Part shown: in pieces, positions 21,817-64,000 of the stretch
Position numbering within the stretch: the stretch's first letter is position 1
Layout: each line of letters begins with the position of its first letter
Assembly: GCF_039654945.1 (NCBI RefSeq)
Contig: NW_027361838.1
Location: 434,001 to 498,000 of the forward strand
Source of the DNA: Dendrobates tinctorius
Lineage: Eukaryota
Direction: 5' to 3'
Length of the DNA: 64,000 bases
Made by a program: the position numbers and the translations under genes
The notes under the pieces: model-generated
Databases searched by the model: none
What the model saw: only the letters and a program-made list of their open reading frames with translations
Told to the model about the DNA's origin: nothing

Positions 21817-22646
21817 TTATGTTAAAGATGGTAATGCACATAAAGAACCACAGTAACATGCCACTGTCACCATATAAAAATGGATTCAAAGAAAATTCAA
21901 GTGCTACCAGCCAAAATATATTAACTGTGTATAAATAAATGTTGCACTGTGCTTAAGCCTACACTGCCTAAGAGTATAACAAATGTTTGTTATGAACGAG
22001 TGTCAGCCATATAACTTTGATCACTACGCAGTGCCCAAACTGACTGTCGACTCTCCCAACCTGAATATGTCAGCAGGTATTTCTATGCAGCTGTCATGCT
22101 CCTGTCGGGTGAGCCATCGGCCAGTCTCAGCATTGCGCTCAATCCCCATTTGAGATATACGGCCATATGACTCTTCCCTAATGATGACTAATTGTAAATA
22201 AAGCTGTCTTTAATTGAAAAGCTGCTGTCTCCTAGCCTTTATAGGTATAGGCTTTTGACACACTAACACTGAAACTTCTTGGGACTCCCAGCTTACAGTT
22301 GCAGGTGGTCCTGAGCTTGTAACCTTATACCAATTCACCTCTCACTATTGGGCTGTGGTATAAGAAGTTCTATTGCCTCCATCTCAGTGTTTGCTTTTTT
22401 AATTCACCTTCAAGATCTTAATGCCAGGGTATTCTCTGGTGCCCTTATTGACAATAAGTGTGTTTCCTCTACTATTATCAGTCATTTGCTGAGTGTTTTT
22501 TTCTACACACATGTACAATACAAAATAAATTTGTGGTACCGTATTAGCCAGAAAAATAGATGTAAATACTTATGTCCCTCCAAAAAAATTGAGAAAAGTA
22601 TTCAAGGTGTGATACCTTTATTGGCTAACCAGAGAAATTATATTTG

Positions 22647-22689
22647 CAAGCAAGCTTTCAGGGCTCAAAAGGCCCCTTCATCAGGCTTG
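22647..22689 (-). ncRNA. Minimal type I hammerhead ribozyme motif (Penelope pLTR)
   Basis: Reverse complement of the motif at 23838-23880. Confidence 0.75.
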
Positions 22690-22830
22690 ATTACAAGTGA
22701 ATTACTGAGAAAAGATGGCAACATTTAAATAGGAATTACAACAGGACATGAGATGGTGCTAGCTATAGACAGGCCAAGGAAATCAAATTAAGGTTTTTGT
22801 TACACATGCAGATGAGGACCAAGTGTTCTA

Positions 22831-23273
22831 TTAGAGATCTGAAGACCTTCTTGTGGAGGTGTGAACTGTGTTCATGTAATGAGTCATGAACCCAGGTGTC
22901 AAATTCAGTCCTATTGTTAGCGATTGGAACATATTTATAAATTTAAACTCCCAAATCTTCCTTTCTCTGTCACTATTAAAATGACCTTTCAATATTAGGA
23001 CTTTTAGATCTGCCAAGCTGTGTCCAGGTCTAGAGAAGTGTATCCCTACAGGTGTGTCCAGCTCATTTTTTATCGTATGTCTATGCAGATTCATCCTTGT
23101 TTGTAGTTTTTGCTTAGTTTCCCCGATGTATGTCCCTGCATTCCACCTTGTACACTGTATCATGTACACGACATTGGAGGATGTACATGAAAAAGAGTCC
23201 ACGATCTTATAGTCCTGATTTGTGTTTGGTATGGGGACTTTATCTATTGGTGATATGTGGGTGCAGGTCTTGC
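22831..23273 (-). CDS. Penelope GIY-YIG endonuclease domain (truncated C-terminal fragment)
   Basis: FSCTSSNVVYMIQC...YIGETKQKLQTRMNLHR...HF...RKIWE...GLN is the typical PLE GIY-YIG pattern. Confidence 0.9.
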
Positions 23274-23283
23274 TTAGGTAGGT

Positions 23284-23696
23284 GCAAGACCTGCACCCAC
23301 ATATCACCAATAGATAAAGTCCCCATACCAAACACAAATCAGGACTATAAGATCATGGACTCTTTTTCATGTAAATCCTCCAATGTCGTGTACATGATAC
23401 AGTGTACAACTAAGCAAAAACTACAAACAAGGATGAATCTGCATAGACATACGATAAAAAATGAGCTGGACACACCTGTAGGGATACACTTCTCTAGACC
23501 TGGACACAGCTTGGCAGATCTAAAAGTCCTAATATTGAAAGGTCATTTTAATAGTGACAGAGAAAGGAAGATTTGGGAGTTTAAATTTATAAATATGTTC
23601 CAATCGCTAACAATAGGACTGAATTTGACACCTGGGTTCATGACTCATTACATGAACACAGTTCACACCTCCACAAGAAGGTCTTCAGATCTCTAA
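23284..23696 (+). pseudogene. Inverted copy of the Penelope GIY-YIG fragment with an in-frame deletion removing the YIG motif
   Basis: Reads VYMIQCTTKQKL versus VYMIQCTRWNAGTYIGETKQKL in the other arm (10 codons lost). Confidence 0.88.
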
Positions 23697-23837
23697 TAGA
23701 ACACTTGGTCCTCATCTGCATGTGTAACAAAAACCTTAATTTGATTTCCTTGGCCTGTCTATAGCTAGCATCATCTCATGTCCTGTTGTAATTCCTATTT
23801 AAATGTTGCCATCTTTTCTCAGTAATTCACTTGTAAT

Positions 23838-23880
23838 CAAGCCTGATGAAGGGGCCTTTTGAGCCCTGAAAGCTTGCTTG
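23838..23880 (+). ncRNA. Minimal type I hammerhead ribozyme motif (Penelope pLTR)
   Basis: caagc-CTGATGA-aggg(gccttttgag)ccct-GAAA-g/c-TT-gcttg. Stem I is caagc/gcttg, stem III is the palindrome AAGCTT, and the predicted cleavage triplet is CUU. Confidence 0.78.
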
Positions 23881-24670
23881 CAAATATAATTTCTCTGGTT
23901 AGCCAATAAAGGTATCACACCTTGAATACTTTTCTCAATTTTTTTGGGGGGGACATAAGTATTTACATCTATTTCTACACACATGTGATTATTTTTTCTA
24001 CACACATGTGATTATCTACTATATATTTGCATACTCGGCAAAATATATTATTTGCACTTAGAGATGAGAGGATCAATTTGCGGGACTCCAATCCGGCATC
24101 CAGGCTGCTAGATGAGAGGTTCGCAAATTTCTTACCTTCCAGCATCCTTGGTGCACATTTAACTTGTCAGGGCAGGCACAATGTCATCTGTGCAACATGA
24201 TGCATAGATGACATTGTGCCAGCCTTGGCTAATCTAAAGCTGTGCCGGGACGTAGGAAGTTAAAATATTGACGGGCCTCTTATCTAACTGCCAAGCGCCA
24301 CTGACCTGGAAGCTGGATCGGAGTCCCAAGAATCTACGCTTGCACTGATTTCTTAACTAGCTAATTAAATTATTATACTAGTGTACACTAAAACTTAACT
24401 GAACTTTTTGCTCACTTGAATCTAATATGCTTTCTTGCATGTATACCTTGCTACATTTTTAGAAAAATCAATAAAAAGTCAACAAATAAAAATAAAAAGT
24501 AACATTGATGTTAACTGACCGCTGAAGCTCTTCAAATAGCGTTCTTCCTAAGGTATAAAAGCCAATACCTGATAGGTTGAGGAAGCCACCCTAGACAGCA
24601 TGCATTTTGCTTTTACTTGCCTTGCTTCATCAAATGCAGGGACAAATGGAAATTAGTTGTACACTCTGTC

Positions 24671-35099: not shown

Positions 35100-35217
35100 T
35101 TAGGGTTAGGGTTAGGGCTAGGGGTGTGTTGGGGTAAGGTTAGGGCTAGGGTTAGGGTTAGGTCTAGGGTTAGGGCTAGGGTTAGGGCTAGGGTTAGGGC
35201 TAGGGTTAGGGTTAGGG
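35100..35217 (+). repeat. Interstitial telomere-like (TTAGGG/CTAGGG)n tract
   Basis: Direct inspection. Lies inside the piggyBac-like element. Confidence 0.9.
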
Positions 35218-35244
35218 GCGTGTTGGGGTTCGGGTTGGAGTTAG

Positions 35245-37790
35245 AATTGGGGGTTTCCACTGTTTGGGCACATCAGGGGCTCTCCAAATGCAACATGGCG
35301 TCTGATCTCAATTCCAGCCAATTCTGAGTTGAAAAAGTCAAATGGTGCTCCTTCCGTTCCAAGCTCTGCTATGCGCCCAAACAGTGTTTTACCCCCACAT
35401 GTAGGGTATCAGCCTACTCAGGACAAATTGCAAAACAATTTTTGGGGTCCAATTTCTCCTGGTACCCTTGGGAAAATAAAAAAATGGTGACTAAAAGATC
35501 ATGTTTGTGGAAAAAATACGAATTTTTTATTTTCACGCCCGGGCGTTGTAAACTTCTGTGAAGCACTGGGGGGTTCAAAGTGCTCACCACACAACTAGAT
35601 AAGTTCCTTGGGGGGTCTAGTTTACAAAATGGTGTCATTTGGGGGGGTTTCCACTGTTTAGGTACATTAGGGGCTCTCCAAAGCCAACATGACACCCACA
35701 GACCATTCCATCAAAGTCTGCATTCCAAAACGTCACTACTTCCCTTCCGAGCCCCGACGTGTGCCCATACAGTAGTTTTCTCCCACGTATGGGGTATCAG
35801 CATACTCAGGACAAATTGGTCAACAACTTTTGGGGTCCAATTTCTCCTGGTACCCTTGGGAAAATAAAAAAATGGTGACTAAAAGATCATGTTTGTGGAA
35901 AAAATACAAAATTTTTATTTTCACGCCCGGGCGTTGTAAACTTCTGTGAAGCACTGGGGGGTTCAAAGTGCTCACCACACATCTAGATAAGTTCCTTGGG
36001 GGGTCTAGTTTACAAAATGGTGTCATTTGTGGGGGTTTCCACTGTTTAGGTACATTAGGGGCTCTCCAAAGGCAACATGACACCCGCAGACCATTCCATC
36101 AAAGTCTGCATTCCAAAACGTCACTACTTCCCTTCCGAGCCCCGACGTGTGCCCATACAGTAGTTTTCTCCCACGTATGGGGTATCAGCATACTCAGGAC
36201 AAATTGGACAACAACTTTTGGGGTCCAATTTCTCCTGGTACCCTTGGGAAAATAAAAAAATGGTGACTAAAAGATCATGTTTGTGGAAAAAATACGAATT
36301 TTTTATTTTCACGCCCGGGCGTTGTAAACTTCTGTGAAGCACTGGGGGGTCAAAGTGCTCACCACACATCTAGATAAGTTCCTTAGGGGGTCTAGTTTCC
36401 AAAATGGTGTCATTTGTGGGGGGGTTCCACTGTTTTGGTACATCAGGAGTTTTCCAAAAGCGACATGGTGTCCGATCTCAATTCCAGCCAAAAACGTCAA
36501 ATGGCGCTGCTTCCCTTCCGAGCTCTGCCATGCGCCCAAATAGTGGTTTACCCCCACATGTGGGGTATCAGCGTACTCAGGACAAATTGCACAATAACTT
36601 TTAGGGTCCTGTTACCCTTGGAAAAATAAGAATTGAGGGTGAAAAGATCATTTTTGTGGAAAAAATATGATTTTTTAATTGTATGGCTTTATGTTATAAA
36701 CTTCTGGGAAGCCCATGGGGGTTCAAAGTTCTCACCACACATCTAGATAAGTTCCTTAAGGGGTCTAGTTTCCAAAATGGTGTCATTTGTGGGGGGTTTC
36801 CACTGTTTTGGTACATCAGGAGTTTTCCAAACGCGACATGGTGTCCGATCTCAATTCCAGCCAAAAACGTCAAATGGCGCTGCTTCCCTTCCGAGCTCTG
36901 CCATGCGCCCAAATAGTGGTTTACCCCCACATGTGGGGTATCAGCGTACTCAGGACAAATTGCACAATAACTTTTAGGGTCCTGTTACCCTTGGAAAAAT
37001 AAGAATTGAGGGTGAAAAGATCATTTTTGTGGAAAAAATATGATTTTTTAATTGTATGGCTTTATGTTATAAACTTCTGTGAAGCCCATGGGGGTTCAAA
37101 GTTCTCACCACACATCTAGATAAGTTCCTTAGGGGGTCTAGTTTCCAAAATGGTGTCATTTGTGGGGGGTTTCCACTGTTTTGGTACATCAGGGGTTTTC
37201 CAAACGCGACATGGTGTCCGATCTCAATTCCAGCCAAAAACGTCAAATGGCGCTGCTTCCCTTCCGAGCTCTGCCATGCGCCAAAATAGTGGTTTACCCC
37301 CACATGTGGGGTATCAGCGTACTCAGGACAAATTGCACAATAACTTTTAGGGTCCTGTTACCCTTGAGAAAATAAAAATTGGGGTGAAAAGATCATTTTT
37401 GTGGAAAAAATATGATTTTTTAATTGTACCGCTGTACGTTATAAACTTCTGTAAAGCCCTTGTGGGTTCAAAGTTCTCACCACATATCTAGATAAGTTCC
37501 TTGGGGGGTCTAGTTTCCAAAATGGGGTCACTTGTAGGGGGTTTCCACTGTTTAGGTACATCAGGGACTCTCCAAACGTGACATGGCGTCCAATCTGAAT
37601 TCCAGCCAATTTTGCATTGAAAAAGTCAAACGGCGCTCCTTCCATTCTGAGCTCTGCCATGCGCCGAAACAGTCGTTCCCCCCACATATCAGGTATCTGC
37701 GTACTCAGGACAAATTGCACAATAACTTTTGCAGTTCAATTTCTCCTGTTACCCTTGGTAAAATAAAAAAAATTGAACCTGAAGTATTTT
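35245..37790. repeat. Tandem array of ~373-388 bp units (about 7)
   Basis: Marker tactcaggacaaattg at 35415, 35803, 36191, 36574, 36947, 37320 and 37702. Confidence 0.92.
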
Positions 37791-59778: not shown

Positions 59779-61213
59779 TAAGACCTGCACCACCAACTTC
59801 AGCACAGCTAGGTGGAAACGATAGCAGGCTGTTCTGAAACTCATCTGTTTGGGGGACAAATCCCACAATGCACAACAACTATGGACTGGTATCAAACAGC
59901 AGACAGATGCTGGTGAATCTCAAGCCTTGTCTTGTGGGGTGCAATAACGGGCAAAATCTCATAGAAGCGCTAAGCCTAGGTGGTTTGAAGCACACCCCTA
60001 TTCTCAATTATCACTGTTAAGCTAAGTTATTAAAAAATCGTTTCGGCTTCATTCAGAAAACTCAGAAGATTTTTTTCTCAATTGTCATTCATATAACTCT
60101 TTTTATACTTCAGAAGTTATTAAAATGCATGAAATTAAATACGGTTTCCTATGTTATAGAATTGCAATACATCTGGAAAATCTGATGTTGAACTGCTGCT
60201 TTTTGCAAACCCATAGACATTGAAGGGCAAGTCTCATACAACATACAGACTCAAAATGTGAAAAAAATGCTCATCTGCTTTGCACCGTTGATTAACATTG
60301 GCATGATTGCTGTCCGTGTGCTTGTTTGTTTTTTGAAGGCAGCACTCAGACCAAAAATATGCTCTTGAGAACTTGGTCTAACAGTGAGGTTTAGTTTTGT
60401 GATTTTTTTCAGTATATTCTTCTCTTGGTCATTTACTCCATCATCCAGGACCATGATTTGTCTGGTTTTCTGTGAATACTAGTTATGCAAATAGCAATAA
60501 GTTAGCAAAAGTTAGTTAATTTGTAAAGCAGAAGAAGGGTATTAAAACCACAGAGCATCCTTGTCCAGCATGCTGGACATAAAAGAGAGCAGGATGGGCA
60601 GAGAAATAAAGTTATTCACAGGGGTGGTGAGGAGCAGATTCACTAATGTAGTAGCTGGGCCAGCTTTTTATTGACTCCAGTTGCTGTTTTTCAGTGGTGC
60701 AAGTTATTGCTCCCATGGTCAGTAAATCCGAGGGCTATTTGCAATACTGACAGTGACTCAGATTTTATATGCATGAATGCTTAACTAGTAACATGAATGA
60801 ATAATTTCCGAATGATAAGGAAATAATTTGCCAAAACTATAAATTTCTAGTGGGCCTTGTGGGATATCTTATAGGACAAATAGCTTACAACAGCTGCATA
60901 TCCTTCCCAGCTTTAATAATTATTCTCCATTTCATAAACACTAAAATGTAAATGTTGTCCAAAAGCACCATGAATATTATTTAATTTGCCAACCTAAAAT
61001 TTTAGAATATTTTTTATTGTTTCTGTCTCTAAAACGGTCAGGCTTATTCATTTTATGTTTTGTTTCAGAAATTAAAGGAGCATCTCTGACATTTTTTTTA
61101 TATTGATAATACATTTTCCTATTACATACATTTTTATCAACACCCCTAACTGGTGCATTGCATATTATGTATAGTGTGGATTTGACTTTAACAATTATAT
61201 TGTTACCTAATTA

Positions 61214-62522
61214 CCGTATATACTCGTGTATAAGTCGACCCGTGTATAAGTCGACCCCCCTAATTTTACCTCAAAAAACTGGGAAAAATGTATTGACTCG
61301 CGTATAAGTCGAGGGTGCACAGTGAGTGGCCTCAGTTATCTGCATAGTATGTGGCCCCAGTTATGATGCACAGTATGTGGCCCCAGTTATGATGCACAGT
61401 GAGTGGCCCCAGTTATCTGCACAGTGAGTGGCCCCAGTTATCAGCACAGTGAGTGGCCCCAGTTATGATGCACAGTGAGTGGCCCCAGTTATGATGCACA
61501 GTGTGTGGCCCCAGTTATGATGCACAGTGTGTGGCCCCAGTTATGATGCACAGTATATGGCCCCAGTTATGATGCACAGTATGTGGCCCCAGTTATGATG
61601 CACAGTGAGTGGCCCCAGTTATGATGCACAGTGAGTGGCCCCAGTTATGATGCACAGTGAGTGGCCCCAGTTATCATGCACAGTGAGTGGCCCCAGTTAT
61701 CATGCACAGTGAGTGGCCCCAGCTTTTCTGCACAGTGAGTGGCCCCAGTTATTTGCACAGTGAGTGGCCCCAGTTATTTGCACAGTGAGTGGCCCCAGTT
61801 ATTTGCACAGTGAGTGGCCCCAGTTATTTGCAGTGAGTGGCCCCAGTTATTTGCACAGTGAGTGGCCCCAGTTATTTGCAAAGTGAGTGGCCCCAGCTTT
61901 TCTGCACAGTGAGTGGCCCCAGCTTTTCTGCACAGTGAGTGGCCCCAGCTTTTCGGCACAGTGTGTGGCCCCATCATGTTGCTGCTGCCGCTGCCTCACT
62001 TACAAAAAAAAAAAAACCTGTATGCTCACCTCAGTCGCTGCCCCCTGCTCATCAGCGTTGCGCTCTGCAGTGACTGTGCAGGCAGAGAGCGCGATAGCGC
62101 CCTCTGACCTGAATGTCACTGCAGAGGACGCAAGACAGCAGAGCGCAGGGACAGGTGAATATGCCTCCCAACCCCCCCTTCATACTCACCGGGTCCTGGC
62201 GCTTGTCTCTGCAGCTCCTCTGCTTGTTCCATGTTGTCGGAGCTGCTCTCTTCCTGGTTCAGCGGTCACGTGGTACCCGCTCATTAAATATGCGCATATT
62301 TAATGAGCGGGTACCGTTTGACAGCTGAAGCAGGAAGAGAGCAGCGCCGACAACATGTAACAAGCAGGGGAGCTGCAGAGAAGGGTGAGTATGATCTGAC
62401 ACCCCCGCTCCCCCTCCCCCGCCGATCCCCCCCGGTATATGACTCGTGTATAAGTCGAGAGGGGGGACTTTCAGCCCAAAAAAATGGGCTGAAAATCTCG
62501 ACTTATACACGAGTATATACGG
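61214..62522. mobile_element. Non-autonomous Tc2/pogo-group element (CCGTA termini) with minisatellite and central palindrome
   Basis: TA|ccgtatatactcgtgtataagtcga ... tcgacttatacacgagtatatacgg|TA, perfect 25-bp TIRs. Confidence 0.9.
61316..61972. repeat. 25-26 bp minisatellite (gcacagtgagtggccccagttatgat)
   Basis: About 25 tandem copies, direct inspection. Confidence 0.95.
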
Positions 62523-62688
62523 TATTTTTATTCAGTAAAACCAGATCCTGGACCTATTTCTAATCTGCTTTTATTTTCTTGTTCTAGATTTATTTGGTTC
62601 CCTGTGCATCATTTTACCCTATAATGACCATTTTACCCTAACTGCTGATATACTTGGGCTAGATGGCAGCGTTCAGTGCTATGAGCTA

Positions 62689-63210
62689 CAGTTGTGGCCA
62701 AAAGTATTGACGCCCCTGCAATTCTGTCAGATAATACTCAGTTTCTTTCTGAAAATGATTGCAAACACAAATTCTTTGGTATTATTATCTTCATTTAATA
62801 ATATAATATATAAAAAACACAAAAGAGAATGAAGCAAAAACCAAAACATTGATCATTTCACACAAAACTCCAAAAATGGGCCATAGAAAAGTATTGGCAC
62901 CCTCAGCCTAATACTTGGCTGCACAACCTTTAGCCAAAATAACTGCGACCAACCGCTTCCGGTAACCATCAATGAGTTTCTTACAATGCTGTGCTGGAAT
63001 TTTAGACCATTCTTCTTTGGCAAACTGCTCCAGGTCCCTGATATTTGAAGGGTGCCTTCTCCAAACTGCCACTTTTAGATCTCTCCACAGGTGTTCTAAG
63101 GGATTCAGGTGTGGACTCATTGCTGGCCACCTTAGAAGTCTCCAGTGCTTTCTCTCAAACCATTTTCTAGTGCTTTTTGAAGTGTGTTTTGGGTCATTGT
63201 CCTGCTGGAA
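62689..63210 (-). mobile_element. Tc1 transposon 3' end, interrupted in the catalytic domain by the retrozyme array
   Basis: TA|cagttgtggccaaaagtattg TIR. Codes FQQDNDPKHT...WPAMSPHLNPLEHLW...AKY (62908-63210). Confidence 0.92.
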
Positions 63211-63392
63211 TGTGCAAAACAGAAGCCGCGGAGACACCATCACATGTTTCTCAACGCAAGCAATGACCAGCCAGGTCTTTCCCCGGGAAGGAACAACCAC
63301 GGGAAGGGCAGTCTCCAATGAAGGAAAAGTTCATTCATCCTCATTTTCACAGTCTTTTACTAGGCATTTCTCCTACCAGCCAGTTTCCTACT

Positions 63393-63434
63393 CCACACTG
63401 ATGAGGGGCAATACCCCGAAACAGCTGTCTGTGG
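63393..63434 (+). ncRNA. Type I hammerhead ribozyme
   Basis: ccaca-CTGATGA-gggg(caata)cccc-GAAA-cagctg-TC-tgtgg: complete catalytic core, stems I and II, palindromic stem III ACAGCTGT, GUC cleavage after 63429. Confidence 0.93.
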
Positions 63435-63743
63435 ATGGATACCATGTTTTGGCATAGGTGGTTTCCTTCATTGGAGACTGCCCTTCCCGTGGTTGTTCCT
63501 TCCCGGGGAAAGACCTGGCTGGTCATTGCTTGCGTTGAGAAACATGTGATGGTGTCTCCGCGGCTTCTGTTTTGCATGTTTTGCATATTTCCCATAAGGG
63601 ATGGGGGCATTGCTCTAGAATCACTGCGTTGAGAAACATGTGATGGTGTCTCCGCAGTGTTGGATGTTGATCTCCATGAGTTCATTCATCCTCATTTTCA
63701 CAGTCTTTTACTAGGCATTGCTCCTACCAGCCAGTTTCCTACT

Positions 63744-63785
63744 CCACACTGATGAGGGGCAATACCCCGAAACAGCTGTCTGTGG
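63744..63785 (+). ncRNA. Type I hammerhead ribozyme, second identical copy
   Basis: Same sequence 351 bp downstream. GUC cleavage after 63780. Confidence 0.93.
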
Positions 63786-64000
63786 ATGGATACCATGTTT
63801 TGGCATAGGTGGTTTCCTTCATTGGAGACTGCCCTTCCTGTGGTTGTTCCTTCCCGGGGAAAGACCTGGCTGGTCATTGCTTGCATTGAGAAACATGTGA
63901 TGGTGTCTCCGCGGCTTCTGTTTTGCATGTTTTGCATATTTCCCATAAGGGATGGGGGCAGTGCTCTAGAATCACTGCGTTGAGAAACACGTGATGGTGT

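What the first reader, a model, noticed from the sequence alone, without database searches (positions are those of the whole stretch)
63211..64000. Tandem hammerhead retrozyme array, predicted to yield a 351-nt self-cleaved (possibly circular) RNA
Seen: near-identical 351-bp non-coding units, each with a perfect hammerhead core (CUGAUGA, GAAA, GUC), 5-bp stem I, 4-bp stem II and a self-complementary stem III (ACAGCTGT). Each unit also has an internal 31-bp direct repeat (63531-63561 and 63626-63656). Established: this layout matches newt satellite 2 and metazoan non-LTR retrozymes, whose short-stem-III hammerheads cleave as dimers and release monomer RNAs that can circularise. Inference: this is a young anuran retrozyme family, possibly undescribed, spread by rolling reverse transcription of a circular RNA. 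It postdates the Tc1 it interrupts.
Basis: partly seen in the sequence, partly recalled or inferred. Interest (0 to 1): 0.9.

Follow-up and report, generated by a model that had tools for sequence, protein, structure and literature searches.

The report
Frog hammerhead retrozyme, Penelope-style insertion
This is a real but ordinary copy of a very abundant frog "retrozyme", a 351-base non-coding repeat that carries a self-cutting hammerhead RNA motif and was pasted into an older Tc1 transposon, apparently by Penelope-type machinery.

Summary
Positions 63328-64000 are 1.9 head-to-tail copies of a 351-bp non-coding unit, 5 differences in 322 bp. Each unit has a complete canonical metazoan type-I hammerhead with predicted cuts after 63429 and 63780. 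A structural descriptor finds these motifs and none in 300 shuffles of the window. Rfam does not confirm them: no gathering-level hit, best 16 bits.

That head-to-head leader is the signature of Penelope-like element (PLE) insertions. Its outer end lies about 147 nt 3' of the ribozyme cut, near a right-hand end that other copies share. So reverse transcription probably began inside a multimeric or circular RNA, not at a self-cleaved end.

The family is very abundant in this species and in a second one. The insertion breaks a Tc1 transposase gene, so it is younger than the Tc1.

Self-cleavage, circular RNA and rolling-circle copying remain untested. All the runs laid were assembled contigs, which cannot show RNA ends.

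Non-LTR retrozymes derived from PLEs are already described in amphibians, frogs included. This scan's notes also list 351-354-bp hammerhead arrays on other DNA of the same genome. It is a new member of a known kind, of low interest.

The parts
62689..63210 (-). 3' part of a Tc1-like DNA transposon. Its terminal inverted repeat starts at 62689, next to a TA at 62687-62688. The transposase C-terminus is cut off at 63210 by the insertion.
   Evidence: The minus-strand ORF reads FQQDNDPKH...WPAMSPHLNPLEHLW. Pfam DDE_3 matches at 1.3e-09, above its cutoff. In other copies of this Tc1 the sequence continues after 63210 with GACCCATGACC... in four runs (table 7).
63211..63212 (.). Two filler bases (TG) between the Tc1 break and the inverted leader.
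   Evidence: The inverted arm starts at 63213. The Tc1 family sequence stops matching after 63210.
63213..63327 (-). Inverted, 5'-truncated partial copy of the unit, the reverse complement of 63462-63576. Its 3' end faces the Tc1.
   Evidence: 115 nt, 100% complementary to 63462-63576 and 98% to 63813-63927.
63328..63678 (+). Complete 351-bp retrozyme unit 1. It is non-coding, with 48% G+C.
   Evidence: No Pfam family for its ORFs.
63679..64000 (+). Retrozyme unit 2: 322 of 351 bp, cut by the end of the window.
   Evidence: 98.4% identical to unit 1. Five differences, two of them CpG decay in unit 2.
63386..63439 (+). Hammerhead 1, a canonical metazoan type I motif. Predicted cut after C63429.
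   Evidence: Rfam scores it only 16 bits.
63737..63790 (+). Hammerhead 2, identical to hammerhead 1. Predicted cut after C63780.
63531..63561 (+). First copy of the internal 31-nt repeat, which folds into a hairpin. A shared right-hand (3') end of the family lies 15-21 nt downstream, at about 63576-63582.
   Evidence: The leader's outer end gives 63576. The loose end at 63933, equivalent to 63582 in unit 1, gives the other figure.
63625..63655 (+). Second copy of the 31-nt repeat. It forms the same hairpin, lengthened by different flanking pairs. A second shared right-hand end of the family lies about 45-50 nt downstream, at the equivalent of 63698-63705.
   Evidence: Loose ends at 63698 in three runs.

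Best explanation
The stretch is one insertion of a high-copy, non-coding, non-autonomous retroelement of the metazoan 'non-LTR retrozyme' kind. It consists of a 115-nt inverted, 5'-truncated leader followed by at least 1.9 head-to-tail 351-bp units, and it sits inside an older Tc1-like transposon.

Shown:
- The anatomy of the insertion.
- A complete type-I hammerhead in each unit.
- The lack of coding capacity.
- The abundance of the family in two species.
- The broken Tc1.

Inferred:
1. A Penelope-like element's reverse transcriptase/endonuclease inserted it. The enzyme nicked both target strands and primed cDNA from each. The top-strand cDNA became the short inverted leader. The bottom-strand cDNA became the multimer.
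2. Reverse transcription started at an internal site of the RNA, about 147 nt 3' of the hammerhead cut, not at a self-cleaved 3' end. The template was therefore a multimeric or circular RNA.
3. In transcripts of the array, adjacent hammerheads pair through the palindrome ACAGCUGU into a double hammerhead. They would cut after C63429 and C63780 and release a 351-nt RNA with a 5'-OH and a 2',3'-cyclic phosphate. A tRNA-type ligase could circularise that RNA, as shown for axolotl retrozymes.
For: Anatomy.

Hammerhead:
- All core positions are present. Helix I is 6 bp, helix II is 4 bp, and helix III is 1-2 bp capped by a palindromic tetraloop. This matches the 'canonical metazoan type I' description in PMC4209133 and HHR_Amex1 in PMC7229834.
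- The descriptor finds it, and finds 0 hits in 300 shuffles.
- The single-motif hammerhead fold scores -13.7 kcal/mol against a misfolded minimum of -18.9. Two copies together score -43.3 with an 8-bp intermolecular helix III.

Family:
- 6,021 contigs were laid in a DNA run of the same species and 2,255 in a second species (counts that include contigs of the flanking Tc1). The summed depth over the unit is of the same order as over the Tc1 family.
- In an RNA library of a third organism only the hammerhead and about 65 nt downstream are matched.
- The only variant at 10% or more inside the hammerhead proper is in loop 2; one more lies at its outer 5' edge.

PLE link:
- The inverted leader.
- Head-to-head joints at other positions in other copies (table 5).
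- Right-hand ends with diverse flanks at the equivalents of 63582 and about 63705, with none among the listed ends at the cut site (table 7).
- A purified PLE enzyme cleaves and extends both strands, starts reverse transcription internally at two nearby sites, and does not need hammerhead cleavage (PMC11167929).
- Vertebrate retrozymes group with PLE terminal repeats.
- A PLE fragment with minimal hammerheads lies in the same window.
Against: - Rfam gives no hit at gathering score. The best is 16 bits, E = 2.9.
- There is no evidence here of cleavage, of unit-length RNA or of circles. All runs laid were assembled contigs, which cannot show RNA ends. The two same-species runs guessed to be RNA may be DNA. 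In the one of them that was laid, the unit is about ten times less represented relative to the Tc1 than in the DNA run.
- Only 1 of 9 predicted Xenopus retrozyme dimers cleaved in vitro.
- The right end of the insertion and any target-site duplication lie beyond 64000.
- The unit has no sequence similarity to the one PLE fragment in this window.
- Only 24 of 539 loose ends were listed, so the picture of the family's ends is partial.
Confidence: 0.75

Rival explanations
1. The element is the same, but the hammerhead plays no part in its life cycle, being inactive or cutting only with protein help. The family spreads as unprocessed multimeric transcripts copied by PLE enzyme, like a SINE, and no circular RNA is involved.
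For: - The PLE hammerhead was not needed for insertion in vitro, and no RNA-seq reads began or ended at its cut site (PMC11167929).
- 8 of 9 Xenopus dimers did not cleave.
- The leader's outer end and the shared family ends are not at the cut site.
- The isolated hammerhead fold is not the lowest-energy fold.
Against: - The hammerhead is the canonical type with a loop-1 and loop-2 architecture, not the minimal PLE type.
- Motifs of this type in axolotl retrozymes cleave as dimers and give abundant circles (PMC7229834).
- The hammerhead module is the only part still matched in the more distant organism C.
- Within the family, variation in the hammerhead proper is confined to loop 2.
Confidence: 0.3
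2. The array and its inverted leader arose by DNA-level events, namely unequal crossing-over and a foldback rearrangement of a satellite. It was not inserted as a multimeric cDNA.
For: - Tandem repeats can grow by unequal exchange.
- The leader is 100% identical to unit 1, whereas units 1 and 2 differ by 1.5%. That could mean a later local duplication.
Against: - The block starts at a precise break inside a Tc1 transposase codon, with 2 filler bases.
- Head-to-head junctions recur at other positions in other copies and in other species.
- Zero differences in 115 nt is not unusual at 1.5% divergence: about 1.8 are expected, so P is about 0.17.
- Two of the five differences between the units are CpG decay, which fits units that were identical when inserted.
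Confidence: 0.08
3. The units are the terminal repeat (pLTR) of a full-length autonomous Penelope-like element whose coding region lies beyond the end of the window.
For: - PLEs carry hammerheads in tandem terminal repeats and often have an inverted leader.
- The window ends inside unit 2.
Against: - Two units follow one another directly, with no ORF between them.
- The hammerhead is the canonical retrozyme type, not the minimal PLE type.
Confidence: 0.05

Closest known systems
Axolotl non-LTR retrozymes Rtz331/Rtz353 and newt satellite 2 (Cervera & de la Pena 2020, PMC7229834)
   Same: Tandem non-coding units of about 330-350 bp. Each has a type-I hammerhead with a 4-bp helix II and a very short helix III capped by a palindromic tetraloop, so it is predicted to act as a dimer. 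Very high copy number. G+C below 50%.
   Different: The host here is a frog. I could not test sequence similarity of the unit to the salamander families. No cleavage or circular-RNA data exist for this family, whereas the axolotl elements were shown to cleave as dimers and to accumulate as circles.
Xenopus non-LTR retrozyme families, e.g. REP4_XT (Li, Clavereau & Pollet 2026, bioRxiv 10.64898/2026.07.22.740005)
   Same: Anuran tandem repeats carrying a hammerhead, with an average amphibian consensus of 316 bp. They are interpreted as non-autonomous derivatives of PLE terminal repeats.
   Different: The species here is not identified, and no sequence comparison with those consensus sequences was possible. 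That paper does not describe the inverted-leader junction or internal 3' ends.
Penelope-like elements: Poseidon PAc of the green anole (Frangieh et al. 2024, PMC11167929) and PLE minimal hammerheads (Cervera & de la Pena 2014, PMC4209133)
   Same: Tandem organisation. A head-to-head partial copy that fits cleavage and extension of both target strands. A 3' end set by internal initiation downstream of the hammerhead rather than by the ribozyme cut. Two alternative 3' ends.
   Different: There is no reverse transcriptase or endonuclease ORF. The hammerhead is the canonical type with helix III, not the minimal type. The two 3' ends are about 120 nt apart rather than 30-40. The start region is GU-rich, not an AC-rich stem-loop.
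Schistosoma Sm-alpha hammerhead repeat
   Same: From my own recollection, not a tool result: the same 6-bp proximal helix I with a UAC bulge opposite a single U, and a CAAAUA-type loop 2. Here loop 2 is CAAUA, and a CAAAUA variant is present in the family.
   Different: An unrelated host and unit. Sm-alpha is a SINE-like element with a longer helix III that is active as a monomer.

Membership tests
Hammerhead ribozyme, canonical metazoan type I | Conserved core: C3-A9 (CUGANGA), the G10.1-C11.1 pair, G12-A14, the A15.1-U16.1 pair, and H17 at the cut site. | tested here: met
   Read directly. Exact in both units. The descriptor gives 0 hits in 300 shuffles.
Hammerhead ribozyme, canonical metazoan type I | Helix I about 6 bp, helix II 4 bp, helix III 1-2 bp capped by a small palindromic loop (PMC4209133). 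| tested here: met
   Helix I 63392-63397 with 63430-63435. Helix II 63405-63408 with 63414-63417. Helix III is C-G plus A-U with loop AGCU.
Hammerhead ribozyme, canonical metazoan type I | Match to the Rfam hammerhead covariance models at gathering score. | tested here: not met
   0 hits at gathering score. Best is Hammerhead_3 at 16 bits against a required 48.5, E = 2.9. The very short helix III and the open helix I probably cost most of the score, but the curated test is failed.
Hammerhead ribozyme, canonical metazoan type I | Site-specific self-cleavage. | not testable with these tools
   This needs in vitro transcription of monomer and dimer constructs.
Metazoan non-LTR retrozyme | Tandem non-coding units of about 170-400 nt (51-972 in vertebrates), with at least two consecutive units each holding a complete hammerhead. 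| tested here: met
   Criteria from PMC7229834 and bioRxiv 10.64898/2026.07.22.740005.
Metazoan non-LTR retrozyme | A dispersed multi-copy family with G+C below 50% and no LTR, primer-binding-site or polypurine-tract features. | tested here: met
   Thousands of contigs in two species. G+C is 48%.
Metazoan non-LTR retrozyme | Target-site duplication flanking the array. | not testable with these tools
   The right end of the insertion lies beyond position 64000.
Metazoan non-LTR retrozyme | Expressed as linear and circular unit-length RNA. | tested here: inconclusive
   Contigs matching the unit occur in one run of the same species guessed to be RNA. Its hammerhead part also occurs in one true RNA-seq library of another organism. 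Contigs show no RNA ends, and DNA carry-over is not excluded.
Penelope-type insertion | A tandem or partial-tandem body preceded by an inverted, 5'-truncated copy whose 3' end faces the target. | tested here: met
   63213-63327 is the reverse complement of 63462-63576, joined to the forward array at 63328.
Penelope-type insertion | 3' ends at fixed internal sites of the RNA, not homologous to the target, with two alternative sites ('tail'). | tested here: inconclusive
   The leader ends at unit position 63576. Family loose ends with diverse flanks lie at the equivalents of 63582 and about 63705. Only the best-supported 24 of 539 loose ends were listed.

The most novel reading that the evidence does not exclude
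The duplicated 31-nt hairpin (63531-63561 and 63625-63655) could be the module that a Penelope-like reverse transcriptase recognises. Each copy keeps the same hairpin, lengthened by different flanking base pairs. Each lies shortly upstream of one of the two right-hand ends shared by the family. If so, this retrozyme would show which RNA signal a non-autonomous element borrows from its PLE partner, and that would make the pairing directly testable.
Probability: 0.15. Interest if true: 0.5.

Novelty: new member of a known kind. Interest (0 to 1): 0.22.

Why it matters
This is a clean example of the insertion scar that links animal retrozymes to Penelope-like elements. It has an inverted leader, its 3' end sits away from the ribozyme cut site, and the insertion can be dated relative to the Tc1 it broke. 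That adds junction-level support to a link so far argued from co-occurrence and sequence trees. It does not change what is known: hammerhead retrozymes are already described in amphibians, frogs included, and this genome holds many such copies.

Tried and rejected
- Rfam at gathering score over the whole window found nothing. The permissive search over 63100-64000 gave only 16-bit matches to Hammerhead_3 and a chance lncRNA match.
- BLAST of the unit against the rest of the window found no other copy and no similarity to the PLE fragment at 22500-24010.
- Pfam on the unit's ORFs gave only one sub-threshold chance match. Pfam on the PLE-fragment ORF gave nothing, even at E up to 10.
- The scan's findings index gave nothing by sequence.
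- The supplement held for the 2026 preprint is an oligo order form with no species or consensus list.
- I looked for microhomology that would explain the leader as a snap-back of one cDNA. I found only an unconvincing 6-nt inverted match near 63317-63336 and dropped the idea.
- I did not try to name the species. Run names are coded, and a large protein search seemed poor value.
- The depth figures were not used as copy numbers or expression levels.

Full report
**What is there**

Tandem Repeats Finder reports a period of 351 over 63328-64000, with 1.9 copies and 98% matches. The repeat finder and BLAST agree: unit 1 is 63328-63678, and unit 2 is 63679-64000, cut by the window end and 98.4% identical. 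The units differ at five sites. Two of these are CpG decay in unit 2. That fits units that were identical at insertion and have since drifted by about 0.8% each. The copy is young but not brand new.

The units have no coding capacity. Their short ORFs match no Pfam family above threshold. G+C is 48%.

**The hammerhead**

The 32-nt core string occurs exactly twice, at 63398-63429 and 63749-63780, with none expected by chance. Read directly, the first motif is:
- helix I: 6 bp (63392-63397 with 63430-63435), then an internal loop of UAC opposite a single U, then 3 more pairs;
- CUGAUGA;
- helix II: 4 bp with loop CAAUA;
- GAAA;
- helix III: only A15.1-U16.1 and C-G, capped by AGCU, then C17 at 63429.

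This is the published description of the canonical metazoan type-I hammerhead: helix I of 6 bp, helix II of 4 bp, and helix III of 1-2 bp with a small palindromic loop (PMC4209133). It also matches axolotl HHR_Amex1 (PMC7229834).

A descriptor I wrote finds these two motifs and two minimal hammerheads elsewhere in the window. It finds none in 300 dinucleotide shuffles.

Folding supports dimer action. The single-motif hammerhead fold scores -13.7 kcal/mol, above a misfolded minimum of -18.9. Two copies together reach -43.3, with an 8-bp intermolecular helix III made by the palindrome ACAGCUGU. The 351-nt RNA folded as a circle scores -122.1 kcal/mol, z = -3.3 against shuffles.

There is no hit at gathering score, and the best match is only 16 bits, E = 2.9. 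I attribute this to the near-absent helix III, but it stands as a failed curated test.

Positions 63213-63327 are not a forward unit. They are a perfect 115-nt reverse complement of 63462-63576. The insertion therefore reads: Tc1 up to 63210, two filler bases, an inverted 5'-truncated copy with its 3' end facing the Tc1, then the forward array from 63328. A separate note of this scan on the same stretch (s1-377082) already called this a Penelope signature, and I confirm the anatomy.

Penelope-like elements (PLEs) typically insert as partial tandems. A purified PLE enzyme cleaves and extends both target strands. It starts reverse transcription at two nearby internal sites of the RNA that are not homologous to the target, and it does not need hammerhead cleavage (PMC11167929).

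Here the leader's outer end corresponds to unit position 63576, which is 147 nt 3' of the predicted cut. That is not what priming on a self-cleaved linear monomer would give.

**Evidence from other copies**

All four runs laid are assembled contigs, so no RNA ends, strands or levels can be read from them. They do show the following:
1. The family is very abundant. 6,021 contigs were laid in a DNA run of the same organism and 2,255 in a second organism; these counts include contigs of the flanking Tc1. The summed depth over the unit is of the same order as over the Tc1 family.
2. Other Tc1 copies continue after 63210 with GACCCATGACC..., so the insertion begins at 63211 and is younger than the Tc1.
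3. Contigs leave the unit rightwards into diverse flanks at 63933 (equivalent to 63582, close to the leader's end) and at 63698, effectively about 63705. These look like two shared 3' ends of the family. No listed end falls at the cut site, although only 24 of 539 loose ends were shown.
4. Head-to-head joints occur at other positions in other copies.
5. The only variant at 10% or more inside the hammerhead proper is in loop 2; one more lies at the outer 5' edge of the second motif. An insertion variant restores CAAAUA.
6. In a true RNA-seq library of a third organism, only 63376-63505 is matched, meaning the hammerhead and about 65 nt downstream. This part is therefore the most conserved.

Expression in the source species is not shown. 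The run laid that was guessed to be RNA may be DNA, and in it the unit is about ten times less represented relative to the Tc1 than in the DNA run.

**Context**

The host element is a Tc1-like transposon. The minus-strand ORF reads FQQDNDPKH...WPAMSPHLNPLEHLW, and Pfam DDE_3 matches at 1.3e-09. Its terminal repeat starts at 62689, next to a TA.

The same window holds a foldback PLE fragment at about 22500-24010, with a minimal hammerhead in each arm. Its ORF resembles GIY-YIG endonucleases by language-model features only; Pfam finds nothing. It shares no sequence with the 351-bp unit, so it is not shown to be the partner.

**Mechanism**

My best reading, at about 0.75 overall, has three parts:
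- It is a non-autonomous retrozyme inserted as a multimer (about 0.9).
- PLE machinery inserted it, using both target strands and internal initiation on a multimeric or circular RNA (about 0.7).
- Its transcripts are predicted to cut as double hammerheads after 63429 and 63780 and to release a 351-nt RNA that a cellular ligase can circularise (about 0.5).

The last step rests on the axolotl precedent. It is tempered by the report that only 1 of 9 predicted Xenopus dimers cleaved in vitro. Nothing here tells rolling-circle copying of a circle from copying of a long tandem transcript.

A speculative extra concerns the 31-nt internal repeat. Both copies form the same hairpin, lengthened by different flanking pairs. 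Each lies shortly upstream of one shared 3' end. It could be the enzyme's recognition module.

**Comparison with what is known, and novelty**

Hammerhead tandem repeats are classic in newts and are defined as non-LTR retrozymes in metazoans (PMC7229834). A 2026 preprint finds them in all seven amphibians sampled, defines 57 families in Xenopus frogs, and derives them from PLE terminal repeats. Xenopus tropicalis was already known to carry about 9,000 minimal hammerheads.

The scan's own notes list 351-354-bp hammerhead arrays, some with inverted arms, on other pieces of this same genome. These are unchecked leads, but they agree. I could not name the species or compare the unit with published consensus sequences. 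I therefore file it as a new member of a known kind, of low interest.

Noticed in passing
window 22500-24010: A foldback made of two inverted copies of the 3' end of a Penelope-like element. Each arm has a minimal hammerhead (CUGAUGA at 22684 on the minus strand and 23843 on the plus strand; helix III reduced to the palindrome AGCU; 5-bp helix I). Each arm also has an ORF with a GIY-YIG-like motif. Pfam finds nothing for that ORF, while the protein atlas points to GIY-YIG clusters at score 0.95. The scan already noted this as s1-377173.
   Followed up: partly
window 35100-37771: About 20 degenerate TTAGGG telomere-type repeats (35100-35217) are followed directly by 6.6 tandem copies of a 373-bp unit at 89% matches (35249-37771). 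My scan found no hammerhead there and Rfam found no hit. It could be another tandemly inserted retroelement or a subtelomere-type satellite.
   Followed up: no
window 61209-62527: 30-nt terminal inverted repeats (61209-61238 and 62498-62527, 97% complementary) enclose a 26-bp minisatellite of 25.7 copies (61316-61973) and an 88-nt perfect-centre palindrome (62206-62381). It looks like a MITE-type element that carries a minisatellite, just upstream of the Tc1.
   Followed up: no
window 63525-63710: Both copies of the 31-nt internal repeat fold into the same hairpin, lengthened by different flanking base pairs (a 7-bp CACUGCG/CGCAGUG stem in the second copy). Each precedes one of the two right-hand ends shared by the family.
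   Followed up: partly
window 7528 (minus strand): A lone CUGANGA...GAAA match with a 3-bp helix II. It fails the full hammerhead descriptor and is most likely chance.
   Followed up: yes
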